This document shows positions 1,161 to 62,932 of a stretch of DNA of 64,000 nucleotides, one piece after another. How positions within the stretch are numbered: the first letter of the stretch is position 1; each line of letters begins with the position of its first letter. The DNA comes from Octopus sinensis (lineage: Eukaryota): assembly GCF_006345805.1 (NCBI RefSeq), contig NC_043006.1:100130001-100194000 (forward strand), read 5' to 3'. The position numbers were made by a program, and so were the translations under genes. A model generated the notes under the pieces. The model searched no databases, was not told the DNA's origin, and saw only the letters and a list, made by a program, of their open reading frames with translations.

Positions 1161-3318
1161 ATTTATTTCAACAATTTTGCCACTAGGGCAGTACACAGAG
1201 TAGCTACGGGCTGGACAAAGACATTAAAGGATGATGGTGGTGGTGGATGAAGATGGTGATGGGAGAAGTCAAAAAGCGCCCGCCGACTTCCGCTTCTCTA
1301 AGACATTGTTCTTTTTTTCAATAAGTTCAATTTTCTTTTTTCCTTAGTTTCAATAAATCGACATGAGGTTGCAAACCTCTTACACGAAGGAGGCACTAAA
1401 ACCTCTTACAAAGTTCTTTTTTTTTCATTTCTTTTGCCACAAGGGCAGTATATGCATTCACAAAAATTCTCCCTGTCAGGTCCCCGAAGCAAATTGTCTT
1501 GCCGCCTGCAGACAACTCTGCGGCGACAAGTCGAGGCCTGCAAAGAGAAAAGTAAAATGTTTCCTCTCAAAGGTCTTTGTGACCCTTGACAAAATGTTTT
1601 CCGTTACTACCTCCGCAGCTACCCGCGGAGGCCATAACGGACTCCTTGAGCTGACCGTGTCCTTGCGTTCTCGGTCACCCAAGCCATTCAAAAACTTTTC
1701 CAGCTTCCCTCCCTTGTGGTAAAGGAGGAGAAACAACTCCTCTTCACAGGAAGGGACCTCACACTGATCCGTCAGTGGCACACTTTCCACTGACTGAGCA
1801 CTGTCCGCGGGTGGCACACGTCCCACCCGCGGCTCCGTCGGCGACACAGAAACGTCAGCCGTCCGACCTCTTTTTCTTTTTTTTTTCCTCTTTTTTTTAG
1901 AGGCTGCTAGCCCGGCGGGCTCCTTCGGCAGACACGGGGGGTCGCTATCCTCCTCCTCCGTCTGTACGTTCTTTGGTGAGCAACCATTGTTGCTCACCTG
2001 TCTTTTTCTTTTCGTGGAGGCAACCTCCTCCACGACTTCCACCGTCTCCCCCTCCAATGAGGGGGCAGCGGGCACCTTTTCCTTTTCATGCTCCGGGGCA
2101 GCACCACGGCCACCGGGACACTTCCTCCTGATATGTCCAGGCTCCAGGCACAGGTAACACTTGGGGGGGGGGCGTCCCTCAAGCATCACCGGATACCTGT
2201 ACCCGGCCATCCTCAAAAAGTCCGGTAAAACCAGACTTTTGGCTGATTGGGAGGGGTCAAAACAGCTCTTGACCCCTCCCAATCAGCCGCAGGCTGTACT
2301 TTTACGTTCAGTAGCTTGGAACTGCTACCATCCAAGCCCCGGCGGATAGAGTCCTCTATCCACTCGGGCTCAACGCCTGGTGGTAAGCAGCAGATCCAAG
2401 CTCTCAACAATTTTTCTCCCTTGTAATTTGGGAGAAACAATATTTGTTTGCCCTCAATGGGCTGGCTTGCAAATTCGCAAGCTGCTTTAGGGGAGTCAAA
2501 TAGCAACCAAACCGTTGCGTATTTAACTCCCCGTGCGATATATTTAACGGCTGGCATGTAGTCTGCCAGCTCGTTAACAATAGTGGCCTTTGGAAAGACT
2601 GCTATGGTGTCGAGCGACTTCGAATATGTCCTCAGCACCACGGTCTTTTCCTCGAGCTCATTCAAATATTTTTTGGGAGGTGTCAAATCCCACACAGTGA
2701 ATTTTTTGCCATAACGTAAGATTTAAAACAGTTCAAAATGTGATAAAATAAAATAAGACACAGAAAGGAGAATGAAAAATACAACAGAAGGGAAGAAATA
2801 AAATTAGAAATAGCAGTTCAAAAAAAGTTCTTTTTTAAAATAAATGATAGACGGAGAAAGAAAGTTCAAATCCAGACAAAGGAATTAATTTTTTCTTTTT
2901 TTTTGTTTTCACTTTTTTCGGCCAAAAAATTGTACTCCAGGCCAAATGCACAGTTGGTAAAACACCTTGATAAAATAATCCTTGGTACTCCTTGGTAATT
3001 CCCGTGGATAACACAAAGACAATTTCAAAAACAATTTTTGCAGACGGACTACGCCGCTTTAAAAATACAATTCTCACTGCAAAGTGAGTCTTTACACTCG
3101 ACAACAGGCAGAAAAATTATATCTGGAGCAAAGTGGAGTTTATTATCTGCTAAAAAATATTAAATGCTAAAAAACATTAAATGCAAGCAATAGACCTCAC
3201 TAAGCTCCCAAAAATACAAAACGCCTACCTGTAGTCGAGTCAAAAGTTCAACAATTCACGTTGAAACACGTGACAACTGGAGTAGCAAAAAAACACGTCT
3301 GAACAGGTCAGAGGTGAG
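1161..3318 (-). mobile_element. Non-autonomous gag/ORF1-only retroelement with target-site duplication
   Basis: AAAGCTA at 1154-1160 and 3319-3325 flanks the insertion inside a SINE; it encodes a zinc-knuckle protein; no RT or endonuclease motif seen; A-rich/AATAAA 3' end. Confidence 0.75.
1476..2712 (-). pseudogene. LINE ORF1/gag-like protein with one CX2CX4HX4C knuckle, frameshifted
   Basis: Overlapping ORFs 2213-2695 and 1476-2282; CYLCLEPGHIRRKC; RRM-like RAWICCLPPGVEPEWIEDSI; basic tract KKKRKKKRKRGR; an ATG at 2712 becomes in-frame if one A is added to the A6 run. Confidence 0.7.
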
Positions 3319-34285: not shown

Positions 34286-36727
34286 TCTATGTTTAACTTT
34301 TGCTTTATATTTGTACAAGTTGGTTCCAAGTCTCACCCCGAGACCTCAAGAGACAACAAGCTGGAAGTTCGTGATGTTGTTATGCGTAGTGTGCCATATA
34401 TTTGGTTTTGTATTTAGTGTTGTACTAGTGAATGTCAAAAAAAAAATCGAAAAATATGTTTGTTTTAAAACTTGAGATTACATAGAAAGTATTTTGCGTA
34501 GGATATGAGCAGTTCTTATGAGCACTATCTTTTGAATTTCTGCCATTTTTGGGTTTCCTGGTATCTGAGTTCGGTAACGATCAGCCCCTTTCGCTCTCAT
34601 TCCCAGGGCACCTATGACAACAGGTATTGTTTTAGTCTTCAGGTTCCACATTTTGCTGATTTCTATTTCAAGATCTTTATATTTGCTCAGTTTTTGGTAG
34701 GTCTTGACAGATACGTTTATATAGATTGGGACAGTCATATAAATGAGGAGGCATGTTCTTTGTTTGAAGTCTTTCAATATGATGTCTGGCCTATTTGCAT
34801 CTATCTTTCTGTCAGTTTGAATGGGGAAGTTCCAGAGGAATGTGATGCGCTCATTTTCAAGCACTGGAGGTGGTTTGTGTTCCCACCAGTTTTTTTCATG
34901 GGGCAAATCCAGGTTTTTGCAGATTACCCAGTGAATATATTGTGCAGCTCTACCATGCCTGGTGAGATACTCTGTAGGCTCTAGAAGACTGCACTTGGAG
35001 ACAACATGATCAATGGTTTCATTTTGTTGTTGATATACACGACATGTTGGGCTACTGCCGTTCTTTAATATATTGGCTTGGTAGATCCTTGTTGGTAGGC
35101 ATTGATCTTGAGCTGCGATGATAAACCCTTCTGTTTCAGATTTTAAGCCAGAGGCCATTAGCCATTGATGGGTCAGGGCTTTGCCAACATCTGTATTATT
35201 CGCTCTCTTTGGGTATTTGCCATAGAGAGGTTTTTCTTGCCATTTATCATTCAGAAGATCTAAGGCAGCAGTTTTGGCACGGGTTTTCATGCGTTTAGCT
35301 TTTTCTGTGCTTGTTTCTTGTATGTCTAATTCCGAAATTTGTTGCATTCGGAATTCACTTAGATATTCCTTTGCCTGTTTTGTTACTGAGTATGATGCTT
35401 TCTTGTTTTCATGTTTTGAGACAAGTTTTAACATCCAGTCCTCAGAGTTTTTCAGGTAGGTGTCTAGGCCAATTGTAGCAATCTTCATTGTTATTGCCAG
35501 TTGTAAAAGTCCACGGCCTCCATCTTTTCTTGGCAGATAAAGTCGTTCTATATCTGCCTTAGGGTGGTACATTCTATGCATTGTCAACAGTTTTCGTATT
35601 TTTCTGTCAAGGTTTCTTATTTCAGTAATTGACCAGTTAACGATATTCAAACTGTAAGTCACGACTGGTATGGCTAGAGCATTGATCGCTTCGATCCTGT
35701 TTCTCGCATTCAGCTCTGTCTTGAGTATTGCTCTTACTCTGCGATAACATTCTCTCCTGATCCTTTCCTTCATCACTGAATGCCTTATTCCGTCCCCTTC
35801 AATTACCCGTAGGTACTTGTAGCTCTCCGCTGGGTCTAATTATTTTATGACATTCTGCTGGTCAAGGTTAACGTTGGATGTTTCTGTCATTTTCCCTTTG
35901 ATAAAGGTAGCTTTTGCACATTTATCGAGGCCAAATTGCATTCTGATGTCGTCACTGAATTGTTTAACAATCGCTAGTAAGCCCTTGAGTGGTTTGTCAT
36001 TTTTTGCAAAGAGCTTTAAATCATCTATATAAAAGAGATTAATTATATTTTTATCCAACATTTTATATCCGTACTGTGCGTCACTGAGCAATTTTGAGAG
36101 AGGTATTAAGGCTAAACAAAAGAGAAGTGGTGATAGTGAGTCACCCTGGAAAATGCCACATGAAATTTTTACATCAGCAGCATTTAGAGATTCATTGTCA
36201 CTGTTCAAAGTTAGTGTGGTTCTCCATGATCTCATAATTACAGACAAAAAGTTTCGGACAGTAGGTGCATTTCCAGGCATTTCTTTCCAGGCTATGTGGT
36301 AGGCTATCAAAAGCCTTTTTTATAGTCTATCCGGACTATTGACAAGTTTTTGTGTCGTTTGTGACAATCTTCTAAGATTATCTTATTGATGAGTAGTTGA
36401 TCTTTACAACCATAAGATCCACGTTTATATCCTTTCTTTTCATTAGGGAATATGCTGCTGTCTGTTAAAAAACTATAGGCATATTCCGTCAGGACAGATG
36501 TTAGCGTTTTATACATAGTTGTTAAGCAGGTTATGGGTCTATAGTTTTTTGGTTCATTTGTTTCTTCACTTTTTGGAAGCAGGAATGTTAACCCATTAAC
36601 TAGTCAAGGGGGCATCCTACTAGGGTGTCGCAAAACATCATTGTAAAGATCTGTTAGCAGTTCATGGCTCTCTGGGAAGGCATTCAAACAGAAGTTAGGA
36701 ATTTTATCCTTTCCTGGAGACTTCCAT
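34286..36727 (-). mobile_element. R4/Dong-clade non-LTR retrotransposon, 5'-truncated, in (TAA)n
   Basis: RT GIFQGDSLSPLLF and YIDDLK; CCHC-derived CRVY...HVVSKC; restriction-like endonuclease RPDIILKD...K..KYKDL; (TAA)n on both flanks. Confidence 0.92.
34478..36720 (-). pseudogene. R4-type RT plus RLE endonuclease ORF broken into 3-4 frames
   Basis: ORFs 36307-36516, 35840-36310 and 34478-35776 are consecutive pieces of one protein. Confidence 0.9.
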
Positions 36728-44062: not shown

Positions 44063-44626
44063 TCAGGTCACTTTCGAGTGCTACTGGTAACATGTAACCC
44101 AGTACAAACTGTTGCATGGTCGGGCTGTCGGCGACTAAACCGGCAACCCCACCAAGCTTGCTTGGTGAGGAGGGTGTTTATTGGACACCCTGCGGGATGA
44201 AAAACAAAACCCGTCAAAGAGCAGAGGAACTCTTGAGAGTCAACGGCCATCCAATAAATGTTTTAAGGCTGTATCATGCGCGGGGACGTGGAAATAATCG
44301 GACTGAATACCCGATCGCGCAGTTAAACCATTGGGAGTGAAGGATTCCTTGCCTTAGGACATCCTTCTAGGAGAAGGTAACTGGGATAACTCCGACATAA
44401 AACCTGCGGCTCAGTGGTTACCGATGATGTTGACTCGTTCTTCTTTTCTGATTATGGCTGGTGTTCCTTAGTGAGTGGGATTGACTCAGTGCACAGCCTT
44501 TCCTCACTTTAAAAAACAATCTTCTTGCACAGGCATTGAGCGATAACAGCATTGATTAAGCTTCGTGCAATGGCCATCCTCGATAATGAGGGGGCAGCCG
44601 CCATGTATGTATGTATGTATGTATGT
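44063..44626 (+). mobile_element. Bipartite RTE-derived non-autonomous element (5' UTR plus 3' end plus (GTAT)n)
   Basis: RTE 5' UTR-like CTAGGAGAAGGTAACT...AAACC; last 49 bp (44556-44604) match the RTE 3' UTR at 45098-45146. Confidence 0.7.
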
Positions 44627-45230
44627 TTCAGGAGAGATGCAAGAATAGCTATTGATCGTAGCAGGTGGAGAAGGATTGTGCATGAGGGGACAGCCACTTT
44701 TGAGAAATCTCGAGTTGCACATGAGAAAGTAAGGAGGGATGTCAGGAAGGGCACCGCTGTTACACTTCCTTTGATGCTGACATGCGATGTATGTGCAAGA
44801 CTCTGCCTCAGTAAAGCTGGACTCATGAGTCATCTTCGTAGTCATAAAGCGAGACAGATGAGTGACAACCTGGCCACTGATGGTGGTGTAACGCACCATA
44901 CTAATCATATCTGTCGGGCATGTGGAAGAGAGTGTAATTCGGCAGGAAGACTTAAACGAGATGCAAAGGTACATGAAGCCCAGTTACAACGACAGCCAGC
45001 TATTACCGGTAGAGGTTTTAGTTGCCAATTTTGTACGAGACGTTGTAGATCTTTAGCTGGGCTAAAAAGTCACATTCGATCACAGCACCAGTAACAGTTA
45101 AGCTTCGTGCAATGACCATACTCGATAACGAGGGGGCAGCCATAATGTATGTATGTATGTATGTATGTATGTATGTATGTATTATGTATGTATGTATGTA
45201 TGTATGTATGTATGTTTGTAAGTATGTATG
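44627..45230 (+). mobile_element. RTE-clade LINE 3' end with three C2H2-type zinc fingers and (GTAT)n tail
   Basis: IAIDRSRWRRIVHEG...FE; CDVCARLCLSKAGLMSHLRSH, CRACGREC..., CQFCTRRCRSLAGLKSHIRSQH*. Confidence 0.85.
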
Positions 45231-47040: not shown

Positions 47041-47151
47041 CAGTGAATGGACACACGAGAGTCAGTGAATGGCACTGTATCAGGGCATTTATTATTATTA
47101 TTATCATCATCACTACCATCATCATCATCACCACCATCATCATCATCATCG

Positions 47152-47196
<45 letters not shown>

Positions 47197-47433: not shown

Positions 47434-47479
<46 letters not shown>

Positions 47480-48115
47480 AGTAGTAGTAGTAGTAATATT
47501 TGTAGTAGTAGAAGTATGTGTAGAAGTAGTAGTATTTGTAGTAGTAGTAGTATTAGTAGCAGTACAGCCCCTGCGAATGCATGCCTTTCATCGACTCTCA
47601 CCTGGTGTTCACAATGATTTCATCACCTTTCGCTCCTTCCAGTGGTTTCAAACTTTATGGATATTATCAGATGATCGACCAAAAATGCAGTTTCTCTCTC
47701 ACCATATTTATTCTCTGTAAACGATGGTGGATTCAGCAATAAAAAACCCTTAACATGCAGCAAAGAGAGCTGTTGCTGCTGGTTTCAGTTAGAACTTCTG
47801 ACACATACCTTATTTTGTTGTGCTGTTACACAGAGGTTTCCTAAAGAACAACCAACCTTTTTCTGCTTGCCAAATCTGCTTAAATTTCATATTTCTGGCG
47901 ACGTTCCTATTCTCTGTCTTTCATAATTCTTTGCATGTCCTGCACTGCATCTTCAATCTATTTCCTTTCCAACGTTCTTCCATCTCAACTGCATTTCATA
48001 CGATCCAATTAAGACACAGGTGACACTATTCGGTGGAAGGCATAAACTGTCGAATCCTATTATCGTCTGTAACGTCACATAATGATGCCAACATTAATAT
48101 GACAGCAGGCTTTTC

Positions 48116-51439: not shown

Positions 51440-52424
51440 TGGGGTTGTCCGGAAAGTTCCTGCCGATTTATAATAGTAGCTTACATTTCAACTTATTTTA
51501 GAACACAGATTAAGCAATCTTTTCGTGAAAGAAGGTTTCTCTGCTTATAACCTGTGTTAATTCTGTAACTGATTAAAAAAGAAGATAAGAAAGTTCATTT
51601 TCGGCACTTTATGATAAGAAAGTTCATTTTCGGCACTTTATGCTTTTCTTTTTCCGTAAGGGGGCAAAATACCTCACAAGCAATCAAAGAAATATGCGCA
51701 GCTTACAGTGATGTTTCTTTATCCGAAAGAACTGCACAGAAGTGGTTCGCAACGTTCCAAGCTGGAGATTTTAGCCTTCTTGATTAGGAGTGATCAGGCA
51801 GACCATCCACTACAGATGATGACCAAATCAATTCATTAATTGTGAATAACCCATATTGCACAACCCGAGAATTCGCAGAAAGCCTCAATCTATAAAAATC
51901 CGTTGTTCATGAGCACCTGGTACACAAATCGCTACAATGTTTGGGTACCACATGAGTTGAATGAAAAAAACCTTTCGGGGGCATTTCCATCTGTGATTCG
52001 CTTTATAAACGGAATGAAAATGCGCCTTTTTTAAAGCAAATTGTGACAGGTGATGAGAAATGGATTATCTGCTGAAATGTTCAGAGAAAGCAATCCTGGA
52101 GTGAGTGACACGAGCCACCCTTAGCCACCCCAAAAGCGGGTCTTCACCGTAAAAAAGTCTTGCTTTGTGTCTGGTGGGATTGGAAAGGAATTTTTACTAT
52201 GAGCTTCCCCCAAGTAATCAGACAATTAATTCTGAGAAATACTGCACACAACTGGACGAGTTAAAAGCAGTAATTCAACAGAAACGTCAAGAATTGGCCA
52301 ACAGGAAGGGTGTGGTTTTCCAAAATGATAATGCAAGACCGCACGTTTCTTTTGGAACCAGACAAAAGTTGCTGCAGCTCGGCTGGGATGTGTTACCCCA
52401 CTCTCCGTTTTCACCAGATATTCA
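51440..52424 (+). mobile_element. Mariner (DD34D-type) transposon relic, 3'-truncated
   Basis: TIR-like GGGTTGTCCGGAAAGTTCC after TA; WVPHEL, IVTGDEKWI, LCVWWDWKG, FQNDNARPH, LPHSPFSPDI. Confidence 0.9.
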
Positions 52425-52914
52425 CGCTCATATATATATATACATATATACATATATACATATATACAGAGAGAGAGAGAGGGAGATGCAGGCAGGCACA
52501 GACAGAAGCAGAAAGTAATGTAAGGCAATCAAAACAGAAGTGTTCGCTGATATGATAAGTTACTAAATATTATACGAAGTTTTTCGATCTTGTTTTACGT
52601 TATTTTTGCTGTGTGACTACATAGCGGTAGAATCGGATGCACCAAGTCTTAGTCCTTCTTACAGTTATCCATACAGTATACTGGTATTAACAGTCCTAAT
52701 GTCAGCTAGTTCAAATTTAATTACCACACCCTATATCGCAAATATATCGCGCATATATCGCTCTCACTAATAATTACTTGTGTTTCCGCTGGTCAGATTA
52801 CGTAGTTGAAGAACAAAACCTCGTGAAACCTCTGCCACCACATATGCAAACCAATTCCTGAATATGCTTCACTTGCGTACTTAAAAGCATTCGACCTTTG
52901 CCTGGAATAACATA

Positions 52915-57965: not shown

Positions 57966-58069
<104 letters not shown>

Positions 58070-58252
58070 ATCTGTGTGTGCGTGTATGTGTATATGTAAC
58101 ATACATACATACATATATATACAGACTGTATATGTGTATATAAAGGATGCACCGATAACAAGCTGGTGGAGAATCTGTCTGAGGCTAAACTAGTAACATT
58201 CAACAGCCACTTCGATGTGACAAGTTACTTTACTATATATATATGTATATAT

Positions 58253-59141: not shown

Positions 59142-61319
59142 ATATTGTTAATATTTCTTTTGGTGCTCCTTGCTCTTTTTGATATTATAAAGAGAAAACC
59201 CACTGGTTTCACCTGCGGATGACAAAAGGATGATTACAGGCGTTCACATACTGCTTTTGATGCAAAGAGTGGGCTCACTGACCGGATGGATTATTTCTGA
59301 AAGAAAAAAGTTATCGGACAACACAGAGTTATAATCTCGGATCTTTTTATTCAGCGGTAACTTTTGTTGCTTTAGAATCTGTAACATTGTTGCTAAACAT
59401 AATCTACATAATTTAATTTATGGAACTAACATGAAGCAGAATACAAAGACTTGTGAAGTTAACATTTTGGTCTTTGCCACCTTGTTGTTTAATCTAAAAT
59501 TTGTTAAATTCAAAAGGTTTTATACTGCAGTGATTTACATTACTGCTCGGGAATATATTTTGTTTACTGGACAAAGTAACAGAGCAACTAATTCGTACTC
59601 TATATTCTTTGACGTTTTCGCCTACTATATTCCAAATTAATTTTTGACTTGCTTACAGGAAATTATAAAACACTATAATTATTTCTTGGCTAGTATAAAG
59701 CACATCAATTCTCTATAACATATAATTTGATTAATTGTTGTTGTGAAAGATAAAAGGTTAAGCAGTCGAAATTGTTTCTAAGACATACATCTACAAACGA
59801 TCTATGTGATACAGAGACGATGAATATTTAGAATAATAAATATATTCAGAGGCAAAAAAAATTGATTTATAGTCTAATTAAGCTTGCAGACAAATTTACT
59901 AGTATGTGACCTAAACATATTCTAAAGAAGGAAATCAACCTGCGTTAAATTTGAATCACGAAACATTTATATATCCCTTTTGCAAATTACATATTGAATC
60001 ATTGCTATGTTACGACAAGGGTTTCGACCTGTAATGTCTAGTGCAGTTCTTAACCGATGTAAACTTTAAACTAGCCCAACACACAATCCAAAATCTGTCT
60101 TAATCATTTTAAAGATTATTGAACTACAACGTTGATTAGCACTAAAGTCGATTTGGGTGACAGGTGGCCAATAACTTTCAAATATTATAATGGATATATC
60201 AAGTGTTCAGAACTTTTCTCTCGACTACTTTTGATCGAAATATGCTATAAGCTTCAAGAAAATTGGCTTGACATCACTATAGATAATGCTGAATTGTTTA
60301 TCAAGTAGACGGTTTAATACCGTTGCATGTAGCACTTTCAAGATCTCTGGTATTTATATATGTAGTCATCAATATTAATCAATTTTTGAAGATCACATGA
60401 CTTTATCGATGTTTATATTCTTTATAATTTTGAAGAACTGCAATAGTCGAGGAGATAAGATGGTGCCATTAAATTCAATATATTTCCATCTAACATCCGT
60501 GTTATTAATGTCAATGGATAAACCACTTGTAAATCACACCTGTGGATTTAAATTTACTTCTGGTTTAAATGAAAATAAAACTTGCTGGTTTTACTTCGAC
60601 ATATAAAAAAAAATAGATGTAATAAATGCAATTAAATTCCTTGCAGCCCATTAACTTGAGATACGCGTTTCAATCTGCTTTTCCGCAAACCTACGTTATT
60701 CGTAATCTTTCAGATTTTCCGTTTGAAATTGGAAGAGAAAATGTCTCTGTTAATCTTGTTAACAATTCTTTTTATTAACTTTTCAATTTCTATCACAATA
60801 ATAATACTATCACGACATTTAGTCTCGTAAATGAACGGGATCTGTTCCTGGGTGTGTGTATGTGTATGTGTGTGTGTGTGGGGGGGAGGTTCTCAGATTT
60901 AAAATGCGACATTCTTTCCGTTATCCACATTCCAAAGATGGTGCTTAATATCTTTGTAACAAACCAGCTTCTCCAGAGGAAGAATTTAAATGACTAAAAA
61001 CAGAAGAAACATACATACACACACAGACACAGATACACACACACACACACACACACACTAAATACACATTGATAAACCCAGTGGCTACTACTAGCTCCAG
61101 GCCACGATAGACAAGGCGGATACTCTTGAAGACAAGAATCTGAACTTACGGAGACAATATTTACATATCGCCTGAGGAATCATAATTAGGTCTCATAATT
61201 CAGGGAAACGGTTGTATAATCAAGTACTTGCACGCTGGAGAACTGCGTTGCGTAGAGACAATTGTAGTGATTGAAAATAAATGTCCAACCGTACTCCTTG
61301 TTGATTCAATTTTTAAAAA

Positions 61320-61355
<36 letters not shown>

Positions 61356-62626
61356 CTGTATATATACATACAACTATATATGTATGTGTATATATGTACA
61401 TATATATATATATGTATATATATGTATATATATATATATATATATATCAGTAGCAAATTGTTGTTGTTGATGCTGTAGCGCCAGTGAAAGTTGCCTTGCA
61501 ACAGTAGGGCTGGGTGGAAGCAGGTCACATAGTGGTGCCAAACAAGGTGCTTCCAAAGTAGTAGCAGTAGCAGGCAGTAGCAGGTCACATAGCGATATCA
61601 ATGAGGATGTTGAAGTGACCCCTGAATTTTTGGAGTTGAGTCAGTTGGTGCAATATTTCCATTGACAAGTATGACATCTAGTGTTGTCATGTGCATGTGT
61701 AAAGAATGAAATGATCTTGTGATTTCTATTATTTTGTTTTCGATCTGTTTTACAGATCTGTAAAAAGATTCTGACGCTAATTTTTCAGCGATTTTACCGT
61801 AGACATTAGCTTTTACACAATCGTTGTGGTGAGTGTACCAAACGTTTATCAGTGCATTGATTCGTTTCTACCCAGTGGCGTTTTAGAATATTATTGACCA
61901 TTTTCAGTGGGACAATATTATACACTGTACGTCAGTTATTAATGACTTGATATATAAAAGTTTTGTGTCGATATATTCCGAAGTGCGTGGCTATAGCTGG
62001 GTGGGTGTTAGAGAGTTCAGTGTATTTAGTACAAATCAGAAGGAGCGGTGTGCTCCTCAAGTGAAAAGAATGGTACTCACGGGACTAGTTTTAGAACTAA
62101 TCTTGTGTTTAGTTTTGGTTTATATTTGTTCCTCCAGGTTGTATACAAATTTGTGTAAATTTATCCTCCGGTGATAAAAATAGTAGAATGGTAGAATTCA
62201 AGAGATTTGGGACTAAAAACAAAGTTATTGCTGGTTTGAGTTGAAATATGTTTCTTTCGCTACTGACTGGCCGGGGCTATATGCATTTGTTATAATCACT
62301 ATTTCTGTTCAGGGATAAAAATTGCATATTCTTGTTCTCATTGATATTGAAATTATATTGCAAAATTGCAGTTAATCAAATCAGTCGGTTACTGAACTGG
62401 TAGCTGAAATATTGTTTTTTTATTCGGAATTATTGTCACTCAGCAGCTTTTATATTTATGTTATTAACCAATGAACGGTCCCACCTAGTAAGATGAACTA
62501 AGTTAAAAATGCATAATATAAACTCACTAGTGGAAGCAATGCTAATGATATACACTAAACACGTTATGCTACTCTGCAATGTCGAAATCAACTCCTCTTG
62601 CAGGGAAATTACAAACCATTGATCTA

Positions 62627-62779
62627 CATCATCATCATCATTGTTCGACCATGGTCGAGACAATGGAATTTACCATGCTACGCCAGACTTCATGGTCCAT
62701 CATAGCATTACGGAGGTCCTGTTGCTGGATGCCTGTATCCCTGGAGATTGCATCAGGGTAGGAGAGAGCGGGTGGGAGA
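62627..62779 (-). mobile_element. LINE 3' terminus (probably RTE-like) with (TGA)n tail
   Basis: PALSYPDAISRDTGIQQQDLRNAMMDHEVWRSMVNSIVSTMVEQ* followed at once by TGATGATGATGATG; the D-x-x-x-W-R C-terminal pattern is typical of APE-type LINEs. Confidence 0.7.
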
Positions 62780-62932
62780 TGGGCTGAATCCTGGAAGCAC
62801 TGCAATACCAGGCGAACCCGTAGCAAAGGCGGAGCAAGCCCCTAACACTTCGCCTCGTTCTAAAAATCAGTTTAATATCGATGGCCCCAAATAGGGACCG
62901 TATCAGATATTAAGCTGATAAGAACAGGCGAT
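62780..62932 (-). pseudogene. U2: U2 snRNA copy lacking about nt 6-39
   Basis: Minus strand ATCGC|CTGTTCTTATCAGCTTAATATCTGATACG, Sm-like GATTTTTAG, stem-loop IV CCTGGTATTGCAGTGCTTCCAGG, GCCCA end. Confidence 0.92.

What the first reader, a model, noticed from the sequence alone, without database searches (positions are those of the whole stretch)
62627..62932. U2 snRNA fused to a LINE 3' end: chimeric retrocopy or U2-headed SINE
Seen (minus strand): U2 sequence through its 3' terminus (stem-loop IV, GCCCA) joins with no spacer to the last about 45 codons of a LINE ORF, its stop and a (TGA)n tail; about 306 bp in total. Knowledge: U6/L1 chimeras arise by RT template switching in mammals, and snRNA-headed SINEs (SINEU) are known from crocodilians. 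I know of no U2-head plus LINE-tail element in molluscs. Inference: the head-plus-LINE-tail layout is that of a SINE, so this may be an undescribed family mobilised by an RTE-like RT. A one-off chimera would still show that this RT switches onto spliceosomal RNA.
Basis: partly seen in the sequence, partly recalled or inferred. Interest (0 to 1): 0.85.

Follow-up and report, generated by a model that had tools for sequence, protein, structure and literature searches.

The report
U2 snRNA fused to LINE tail
This is a dead 306-bp DNA copy in which a spliceosomal U2 RNA lacking its 5' functional third is joined head-to-tail to the last 140 bases of an RTE-like jumping gene, most likely because the element's reverse transcriptase hopped from its own RNA onto a U2 RNA; the same accident is already documented for U6 with RTE-like elements in lizard and opossum, so it is an ordinary example.

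Summary
On the minus strand, Rfam finds U2 at 104.8 bits (E 4e-20). The next 126 bases are the last 42 codons of a non-LTR retrotransposon ORF, 81-87% identical in DNA to LINE copies in ENA assemblies. The stop codon is the first unit of a (TGA)4.7 tail.

Three amendments are needed:
- U2 positions 6-39 (stem-loop I and the branch-point-binding site) are missing.
- 13 nt at the junction cannot be assigned to either partner.
- No target-site duplication of 6 nt or more exists.

The parent element has one ORF with endonuclease and RT domains, no 3' UTR and a trinucleotide-repeat tail. That is RTE-like architecture.

The best reading is a chimeric retrocopy made by RT template switching from LINE RNA onto the 3' end of U2 RNA. 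It was dead on arrival.

I found no second copy in the window, in 153 related LINE-tail proteins, in exact-ORF look-ups or in the public contig scans. None of these holds the host genome, so the SINE-family idea is untested and currently unsupported.

U6/RTE-like chimeras are already published (Anolis, opossum; PMC4476161). This is therefore a new member of a known kind, of modest interest.

The parts
62928..62932 (-). ATCGC, identical to U2 nt 1-5 and directly abutting U2 position 40. It is either the true 5' end of the U2 copy (implying an internal deletion of nt 6-39) or flanking DNA that matches by chance.
   Evidence: Sequence. The 5-mer occurs at 4.2e-4 per position in the window. The Rfam global alignment of model positions 1-39 has low confidence.
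62780..62927 (-). U2 snRNA copy, Rfam model positions 40 to about 186: stem-loops IIa and IIb, Sm site (GAUUUUUAG), stem-loop III, and stem-loop IV ending in GCCCA. It lacks stem-loop I and the branch-point recognition sequence GUAGUA.
   Evidence: RF00004, 104.8 bits, E 4.4e-20, posterior probabilities near maximal over this stretch.
62767..62779 (-). Junction stretch TCTCCCACCCGCT, of ambiguous origin. It could be the U2 single-stranded 3' tail or a pre-U2 extension, LINE sequence with small indels, or untemplated bases.
   Evidence: Rfam aligns 62779-62774 to U2 model positions 187-192. LINE copies L008 and L009 match CCGCT (62771-62767) with a 2-nt gap. CCATCTC also occurs in LINE copies about 20 nt upstream of the anchor, but the shuffle p is 0.12. 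A LINE reading would need a linker shorter than in any of the 124 relatives in which it could be measured.
62641..62766 (-). Last 42 codons of the ORF of an RTE-like non-LTR retrotransposon (LSYPD...STMVEQ), with no start codon of its own. It contains a short palindrome, TCGACCATGGTCGA (62658-62645), just before the tail.
   Evidence: protein and DNA homology. (palindrome self-hit). (the fold is not better than shuffles, z = -0.8).
62627..62640 (-). (TGA)4.7 tail. Its first unit (62640-62638) is the ORF stop codon. The same tail follows GTCGAACAA in all close LINE relatives.

Best explanation
This is a bipartite chimeric retro-pseudogene made in one retrotransposition event. The reverse transcriptase of an RTE-like LINE primed on its own RNA in the (TGA)n tail. 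It copied the last 140-155 nt, which is the end of the ORF because this family has no 3' UTR. It then switched template to the 3' end of a U2 snRNA (mature or 3'-extended precursor) and copied U2 towards its 5' end. The integrated copy lacks U2 nt 6-39, either because the enzyme skipped or aborted in the heavily modified, structured 5' region, or because of a later deletion.

The product is inert. The U2 part has no branch-point-binding site and no external snRNA promoter. The LINE part is a promoterless ORF stump.

What is shown: the parts, their order and orientation, the tight junction, and the family-typical tail. What is inferred: the template switch itself, its timing, and that this is a one-off rather than a re-amplified unit.
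For: -
- The LINE piece is strictly 3'-terminal. In every relative its homology starts at one point (62766, or 62771 with a 2-nt gap) and runs through the stop into the shared (TGA)n tail.
- Both parts lie on the same strand, in the order snRNA 5', LINE 3'. That is the order expected if cDNA synthesis starts at the LINE 3' end.
- At most 13 nt are unassigned at the join. Six of these align to the pyrimidine-rich 3' tail of the U2 model, and five more match LINE copies L008 and L009.
- No A-rich or (TGA)n tract follows U2, so U2 did not retrotranspose on its own.
- No direct repeat of 6 nt or more brackets either the LINE piece alone or the whole unit.
- The parent family is a bona fide autonomous LINE: endonuclease plus RT in one ORF in L008 and RVT_1 in P0020.
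- There is published precedent. U6 chimeras with RTE-like LINEs occur in Anolis and opossum, the opossum ones 5'-truncated and without obvious TSD. 'Stringent' clades (L2, RTE) mobilise snRNA only as template-switch chimeras (PMC4476161).
- No further copy was found in the window, the related proteins, the exact-ORF look-ups or the public contigs.
Against: - No target-site duplication delimits the unit, so a single insertion event is not proven.
- The U2 part is not full length, whereas most U6/L1 chimeras carry a full-length snRNA.
- The 13-nt junction stretch is unexplained.
- The closest LINE copies found are only 81-87% identical and come from unidentified metagenome assemblies, so the actual parent subfamily is unknown.
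- Copy number in the host genome could not be measured. All negative searches were in collections that apparently do not contain this host: even its U2 3' 24-mer is absent.
Confidence: 0.68

Rival explanations
1. It is one member of a multi-copy U2-headed SINE family. An original U2/LINE chimera became a transcribed master copy, and its RNA, carrying the LINE's 3' recognition end and (TGA)n tail, is mobilised in trans by the RTE-like LINE.
For: - The head plus LINE-tail layout is that of a simple SINE.
- The tail keeps the whole 3' end, including a palindrome next to the repeat tail that is conserved across relatives.
- A shared internal deletion in a U2-derived head has a precedent in crocodilian SINEU-3 (PMC4494074).
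- RTE-clade LINEs are prolific SINE partners (PMC5786205).
- An Octopus vulgaris annotation lists one 'SINE U' family covering 369 kb (PMC13282606). Its nature is uncharacterised, and the relation of this window to octopus is unverified.
Against: - There is one copy in 64 kb.
- No ORF spanning the junction was found among the LINE-tail proteins or in the exact look-ups. These searches have low power.
- U2 genes have external promoters only, and this head also lacks nt 6-39, so there is no obvious way to transcribe it.
- The LINE part is still an intact reading frame only about 5% from the family consensus. That is what a direct copy of LINE RNA would look like; a long-independent SINE lineage would show more decay.
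Confidence: 0.15
2. There were two separate events. A U2 pseudogene or orphon fragment was already here, and a 5'-truncated copy of the LINE later inserted, in the same orientation, a few bases behind its 3' end.
For: - No TSD ties the two parts together.
- The 13 unassigned bases could be old flanking DNA.
- 5'-truncated copies of about 140 nt of this LINE family do exist on their own. L010 starts at the very same codon, although I picked that locus for that reason.
Against: - It requires an insertion within 0-13 nt of the U2 3' end and in the same orientation, purely by chance.
- No repeat brackets the LINE piece alone.
- A U2 retro-pseudogene made on its own would need its own 3' tail, and none is present.
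- Nothing resembling an snRNA 3' box follows the element (the consensus is from memory).
Confidence: 0.08
3. The chimera formed at the RNA level before reverse transcription. A U2 RNA was ligated to a 5'-cleaved LINE RNA fragment, as RtcB does for U6/L1, and the fused RNA was then retrotransposed through its LINE 3' end.
For: This mechanism is demonstrated for U6/L1 (PMC6789731). It predicts the same DNA anatomy as template switching.
Against: From general knowledge, RtcB needs a 2',3'-cyclic phosphate, which U6 carries but mature U2 does not. Nothing in the sequence distinguishes this route from template switching.
Confidence: 0.06

Closest known systems
U6 snRNA / RTE-like LINE chimeras in Anolis carolinensis (RTEX-2 Acar, 3 copies) and opossum (RTE_Mdo, RTESINE1): Doucet et al. 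2015, PMC4476161
   Same: A spliceosomal snRNA copy sits 5' of the 3' end of an RTE-type LINE. Both are interpreted as template switching by a 'stringent' RT that cannot mobilise the snRNA alone. The opossum cases are 5'-truncated in the snRNA and lack an obvious TSD, as here.
   Different: The snRNA here is U2 (Pol II, Sm class), not U6. The host is not a vertebrate by the look of the sequence (35% GC, microsatellite-rich), although the taxon is unverified. The LINE here has no 3' UTR and a (TGA)n tail.
U6/L1 and other small-RNA/L1 bipartite chimeric retrogenes of mammals (Buzdin 2002/2003; Garcia-Perez 2007; cited in PMC4494074 and PMC4476161)
   Same: The order is the same (small RNA 5', LINE 3' part), both parts are in sense orientation, the fusion is direct, and the LINE breakpoint is variable.
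   Different: L1 chimeras end in poly(A), usually have 10-20 bp TSDs and usually carry a full-length snRNA. None of these three holds here.
SINEU families of crocodilians (Kojima 2015, PMC4494074)
   Same: The 5' part is derived from U2. SINEU-3 is an internally deleted U2, and a template switch onto U2 is proposed for the family's origin.
   Different: SINEU are multi-copy families with poly(A) tails. They share no tail with a known LINE and are tied to Tx1-Mar elements through a shared target preference. Here there is one copy, an RTE-like coding tail and (TGA)n.
RTE-derived SINEs with tRNA or 5S heads (Malik & Eickbush 1998; Kojima 2018, PMC5786205)
   Same: A small-RNA head is joined to the RTE 3' end, and the partner LINE clade has very short 3' UTRs ending in short tandem repeats.
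   Different: Those heads carry internal Pol III promoters and the families are abundant. A U2 head carries no promoter, and no family is shown here.
Keno (Tx1 clade) LINEs that insert specifically into U2 genes (Kojima & Fujiwara 2004, cited in PMC4494074)
   Same: A LINE is physically associated with U2 sequence.
   Different: Keno interrupts U2 genes at a fixed internal site, with U2 sequence on both sides. Here U2 ends at its natural 3' end and nothing U2-like follows the LINE tail.

Membership tests
snRNA/LINE template-switch chimeric retrocopy | The 5' part is a copy of a small nuclear RNA, in sense orientation relative to the LINE part. | tested here: met
   RF00004 U2 at 104.8 bits on the minus strand. 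The LINE ORF is on the same strand.
snRNA/LINE template-switch chimeric retrocopy | The 3' part is the 3'-terminal segment of a LINE and ends in that LINE's own tail. | tested here: met
   Homology to seven LINE copies starts at 62766/62771 and runs through the stop into the shared (TGA)n tail.
snRNA/LINE template-switch chimeric retrocopy | The fusion is direct at the 3' end of the snRNA, with no genomic spacer or separate tail. | tested here: inconclusive
   13 nt (62779-62767) cannot be assigned. Six of them align to the U2 model's 3' tail and five to L008/L009, so as few as 2 nt may be unassigned. No A-rich tract or other separate tail follows U2.
snRNA/LINE template-switch chimeric retrocopy | One target-site duplication brackets the whole chimera. 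| tested here: not met
   There is no exact direct repeat of 6 nt or more between the flanks. The published RTE-like U6 chimeras of opossum also lack an obvious TSD (PMC4476161).
snRNA/LINE template-switch chimeric retrocopy | The snRNA part reaches the RNA's 5' end, as is usual for U6/L1. | tested here: inconclusive
   ATCGC (U2 nt 1-5) abuts position 40, and the 5-mer frequency is 4.2e-4 per position. However, nt 6-39 are missing.
SINE (including SINEU) | Many dispersed copies share the same head-tail junction but have different flanks. | not testable with these tools
   The host genome is not available. There is one copy in the window and none in the proteins or contigs searched, but those collections lack this host.
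SINE (including SINEU) | The head provides transcription through an internal promoter. | not tested
   From the literature, U2 genes use external PSE/DSE promoters and no internal promoter is known (PMC4494074). The head here also lacks nt 6-39.
SINE (including SINEU) | The 3' tail is shared with a partner LINE. | tested here: met
   81-87% DNA identity over 134-147 nt, including the tail repeat.
SINEU specifically | Poly(A) tail and a Tx1-Mar-type target preference (Mariner-N4_AMi). | tested here: not met
   The tail is (TGA)n, the partner is RTE-like, and the flanks are unique AT-rich sequence.
RTE clade (parent of the LINE piece) | A single ORF encodes an AP-endonuclease and an RT. | tested here: met
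   The L008 ORF has Exo_endo_phos_2 plus RVT_1, and P0020 has RVT_1. The L008 contig lacks the 5' end, so the absence of an ORF1 is not shown.
RTE clade (parent of the LINE piece) | The 3' UTR is extremely short and ends in short tandem repeats. | tested here: met
   The stop codon is the first unit of (TGA)n in the window and in L002, L005, L006, L007, L008, L009 and L010; in L001 the stop is TAA, immediately followed by the same (TGA)n tail.
RTE clade (parent of the LINE piece) | The RT domain is placed phylogenetically within the RTE clade. | not tested
   No reference set of LINE clades is available here. 'RTE-like' rests on architecture only.
Functional U2 snRNA gene | Intact 5' end with stem-loop I and the branch-point recognition sequence GUAGUA. 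| tested here: not met
   Model positions 6-39 are absent.

The most novel reading that the evidence does not exclude
The unit is a member of a transcribed, multi-copy U2-headed SINE family mobilised by an RTE-like LINE in an invertebrate (possibly cephalopod) genome. That would be the first snRNA-headed SINE outside crocodilians and the first with an RTE partner and a coding-sequence tail. It might correspond to the uncharacterised 'SINE U' class listed for Octopus vulgaris.
Probability: 0.15. Interest if true: 0.6.

Novelty: new member of a known kind. Interest (0 to 1): 0.27.

Why it matters
As a single chimera it adds one data point: an RTE-like reverse transcriptase outside vertebrates switches template onto a Pol II, Sm-class snRNA. 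This extends the published U6/RTE cases and fits the view that 'stringent' LINEs can only carry cellular RNAs as chimeras. Such chimeras are also the raw material from which SINEs arise. If genome-wide searches found many copies with the same junction, it would show how a promoterless snRNA head can still found a SINE. That question was left open for the crocodilian SINEU families.

Tried and rejected
1. A second copy in the window. BLASTN and TBLASTN of the unit, the U2 part and the tail found only self-hits and plain (TGA)n microsatellites. The 80-bp (TGA)n at 47117-47196 has no LINE sequence upstream.
2. A single-sequence word-index protein search with the 47-aa tail found nothing, although relatives exist. 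The index is sparse, and this wasted one search.
3. A synthetic 'U2 peptide plus LINE tail' profile, meant to fish for ORFs spanning the same junction, gave only 2 candidates, both plain LINE. It has low power.
4. A check for 5-residue matches to the U2 translated in all three frames, across 153 retrieved LINE-tail proteins, found only two chance 5-mers.
5. Exact look-ups of five ORFs that cross the junction or tail on either strand, and of the 62-aa ORF, found none on record.
6. Public contig scans all returned 0. I scanned for the U2 3' 24-mer (JGI metagenomes, GTDB genomes, IMG/VR), a 'U2 loop, gap, LINE motif' pattern (JGI metagenomes), and a LINE-tail 34-mer (GTDB genomes, IMG/VR). These collections do not contain the host, so the negatives say little.
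7. TSD search. There is no direct repeat of 6 nt or more.
8. Empty-site reconstruction from a paralogous repeat failed because the flanks are unique in the window.
9. LINE origin of the 13-nt junction stretch. The local alignment p is 0.12 by shuffling, and it would need a linker shorter than any measured relative. This stays unresolved.
10. The 3' hairpin as an RT recognition signal. The fold is no better than shuffles (z = -0.8), so I make no claim.
11. CpG decay as a clock. The window's CpG observed/expected ratio is 0.80, too weakly depleted to date the copy.
12. Taxon identification. A Ceph-SINE 23-mer is absent, and the sample accessions of the ENA contigs are uninformative.
13. Rfam on ten LINE-bearing loci, to look for other small-RNA/LINE joins, found none.

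Full report
**What is there.** I read the region on the minus strand. A scan of the whole window against Rfam gives one hit above gathering score: U2 spliceosomal RNA at 62949-62774, minus strand, 104.8 bits against a gathering score of 46, E 4.4e-20.

The confident part of the alignment starts at model position 40 (CUGUUCUUAUCAG, window 62927). It covers stem-loops IIa and IIb, the Sm site, and stem-loops III and IV down to GCCCA at 62780. Model positions 1-39 are not credibly aligned. The sequence there reads ATCGC (62932-62928), which is identical to U2 nt 1-5, followed immediately by position 40.

That 5-mer occurs at only 4.2e-4 per position in the window. I therefore lean to a real U2 5' end with nt 6-39 deleted, but a plain 5' truncation with a chance match is not excluded. 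Either way, stem-loop I and the branch-point-binding GUAGUA are gone, so the copy cannot function as a U2.

**The LINE piece.** Downstream, the frame ending at the TGA at 62640-62638 reads LSYPDAISRDTGIQQQDLRNAMMDHEVWRSMVNSIVSTMVEQ.
- An exhaustive phmmer search of 1.84 billion representatives finds 38 proteins that end with this segment (best E 1e-10, 68-71% identity).
- A profile of these finds 248 more (best P0043, 84% identity).
- P0020 has an RVT_1 domain upstream of the segment.
- The near-complete copy L008 has one long ORF with endonuclease (Exo_endo_phos_2) and RVT_1 domains.
- At the DNA level, seven copies from ENA metagenome assemblies are 81-87% identical to the window over 134-147 nt.
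- In every one, homology begins at the same point (CTCTCCTAC, 62766; five bases earlier with a 2-nt gap in L008 and L009). It continues through GTCGAACAA into the same (TGA)n tail.

The family thus has no 3' UTR: its stop codon is the first repeat unit of the tail. One ORF with endonuclease and RT, no 3' UTR and a short tandem-repeat tail is the architecture described for the RTE class (Malik & Eickbush 1998, as cited). I did not test clade membership phylogenetically.

**The junction.** Thirteen bases lie between GCCCA (62780) and CTCTCC (62766): TCTCCCACCCGCT.
- Rfam aligns the first six to the pyrimidine-rich single-stranded 3' tail of the U2 model.
- The last five match L008 and L009 if a 2-nt gap is allowed.
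- On that reading only two bases are orphaned.
- CCATCTC, which overlaps the U2 end, also occurs in several LINE copies about 20 nt upstream of the anchor. This could be microhomology used in a template switch. However, shuffling gives p = 0.12, and a fully LINE-derived reading would need a linker shorter than in any of the 124 relatives in which it could be measured.

The join is therefore tight but not proven to lack a spacer. The species' own U2 gene flanks and the true parent subfamily would settle it.

**Boundaries and context.**
- No direct repeat of 6 nt or more links the flanks, either around the whole unit or around the LINE piece alone.
- The flanks are unique in the window, so no paralogous empty site is available.
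- No tRNA is present, and no other Rfam family reaches its gathering score; the sub-threshold miRNA matches nearby are TA/TG microsatellites.
- No ORF of note lies near the element.
- The LINE piece differs from the consensus of its relatives at about 7 of 140 positions, of which two or three are private to the window. One private change is a CpG transition (CGT to CAT, giving the unusual H in MMDHEVW), and a second CpG-type difference (ACG to ATG) is seen only against L001 and L006. The copy is therefore not brand new.
- The window's CpG depletion is too weak (observed/expected 0.80) to date the copy.

**How it most likely arose.** The order (snRNA 5', LINE 3' end with its own tail), the shared orientation, the tight join at the natural 3' end of U2, and the lack of any separate tail behind U2 are what target-primed reverse transcription followed by a template switch predicts. 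The RT starts in the LINE's (UGA)n tail, copies about 140-155 nt, jumps to the 3' end of a U2 RNA and copies it towards the 5' end.

This is the accepted origin of U6/L1 chimeras. The same has been reported for RTE-like LINEs: three U6/RTEX-2 chimeras in Anolis, and 5'-truncated U6 joined to RTE_Mdo and RTESINE1 in opossum without obvious TSDs. Those authors noted that 'stringent' clades (L2, RTE) produce snRNA copies only as chimeras (PMC4476161). The missing TSD and incomplete snRNA seen here match the opossum cases.

RNA ligation before reverse transcription, shown for U6/L1 (PMC6789731), would give the same DNA. It is less likely for U2, which lacks the cyclic-phosphate end (general knowledge).

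**Family or one-off.** These searches found nothing:
- the window itself;
- peptides of the U2 translated in all three frames, among 153 LINE-tail proteins;
- a chimeric profile search (only two candidates, so weak);
- exact look-ups of junction-spanning ORFs;
- scans of JGI metagenomes, GTDB genomes and IMG/VR for the U2 3' 24-mer, plus a gapped U2-LINE pattern (JGI only) and a LINE-tail 34-mer (GTDB and IMG/VR);
- Rfam on ten LINE-bearing loci.

Because even the host's U2 24-mer is absent from those collections, the negatives carry little weight.

Against a family on intrinsic grounds: the head has no known internal promoter and lacks nt 6-39, and the tail is still an open frame close to the LINE consensus.

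For a family: the layout is SINE-like, SINEU-3 shows that an internally deleted U2 can found a family (PMC4494074), and a 2026 Octopus vulgaris annotation lists an uncharacterised 'SINE U' class (one family, 369 kb; PMC13282606). I put the family reading at about 0.15.

**Taxon.** The window has 35% GC, is very rich in microsatellites and is full of transposon fragments. That is compatible with a cephalopod, but a Ceph-SINE motif is absent and the ENA samples holding the nearest LINE copies are not identifiable here.

**Verdict.** The chimera interpretation is supported, and the SINE interpretation is open but unsupported. Because snRNA/RTE-like chimeras are already described in vertebrates, this is a new member of a known kind (U2 instead of U6, a different host group), of modest interest unless a genome-wide search reveals a family.

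Noticed in passing
window 47117-47196 and 47440-47560: There is an 80-bp (TGA)n/(TCA)n microsatellite and, about 250 bp away, a long (TAC)n-type array. No LINE ORF end lies upstream of the (TGA)n, so it is a plain microsatellite and not another tail of this LINE family.
   Followed up: yes
window 34478-36310 (-): Two adjacent ORFs (432 and 156 aa) carry an RVT_1 fragment and a weak zf-RVT match. This is a decayed retroelement RT unrelated to the LINE tail studied here.
   Followed up: partly
window 1476-2695 (-): Overlapping ORFs of 268 and 160 aa include a CCHC zinc knuckle (weak Pfam hit). They look like a gag-like retroelement ORF.
   Followed up: partly
window 52165-52518 (+) and 44552-45094 (+): There is a mariner-type transposase fragment (Transposase_1, E 2.7e-8) and a 180-aa ORF with C2H2 zinc fingers. 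The nature of the latter (host exon or transposon ORF) was not determined.
   Followed up: partly
window 58054-58123 and 61317-61446: Sub-threshold Rfam 'miRNA' matches (mir-297, mir-466, mir-3149 and others) fall on TA/TG microsatellites. They are composition artefacts.
   Followed up: yes
L002 560-2908: In this ENA contig the LINE tail (TGA)5 is followed within a few bases by another 5'-truncated LINE copy (endonuclease plus RT ORF). This is either nested or adjacent insertion at or next to the repeat tail, or a possible target preference of the family for its own tail repeat.
   Followed up: partly
L010 170-320: This is a solitary 5'-truncated copy of a related LINE that starts at exactly the same codon (L of LTFPD) as the LINE piece in the window. 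I chose this locus because its protein started there, so the coincidence has no statistical weight. A preferred RT stop or switch point about 140 nt from the 3' end would still be worth checking genome-wide.
   Followed up: partly
window 62645-62658 and the same place in L001-L010: The palindrome TCGAC(C)-loop-(G)GTCGA lies immediately before the (TGA)n tail and is kept in all relatives, with only wobble-compatible changes (for example GTTGA in L010). It might be an RT recognition hairpin, but it is also coding (S-T-x-V-E), and the fold is not better than shuffles.
   Followed up: partly
L006 585-615: The contig ends in CTGTCTCTTATACACATCT, a Nextera adaptor. This is an assembly artefact in the public ENA contig.
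   Followed up: no
literature (PMC13282606, supplementary table 1): The Octopus vulgaris repeat annotation lists the classes 'SINE U' (1 family, 369,490 bp) and 'U-L1' (1 family, 52,753 bp) without describing them. The 19 'recently active' U insertions average about 730 bp, which looks more like snRNA gene units than a 300-bp SINE.
   Followed up: partly
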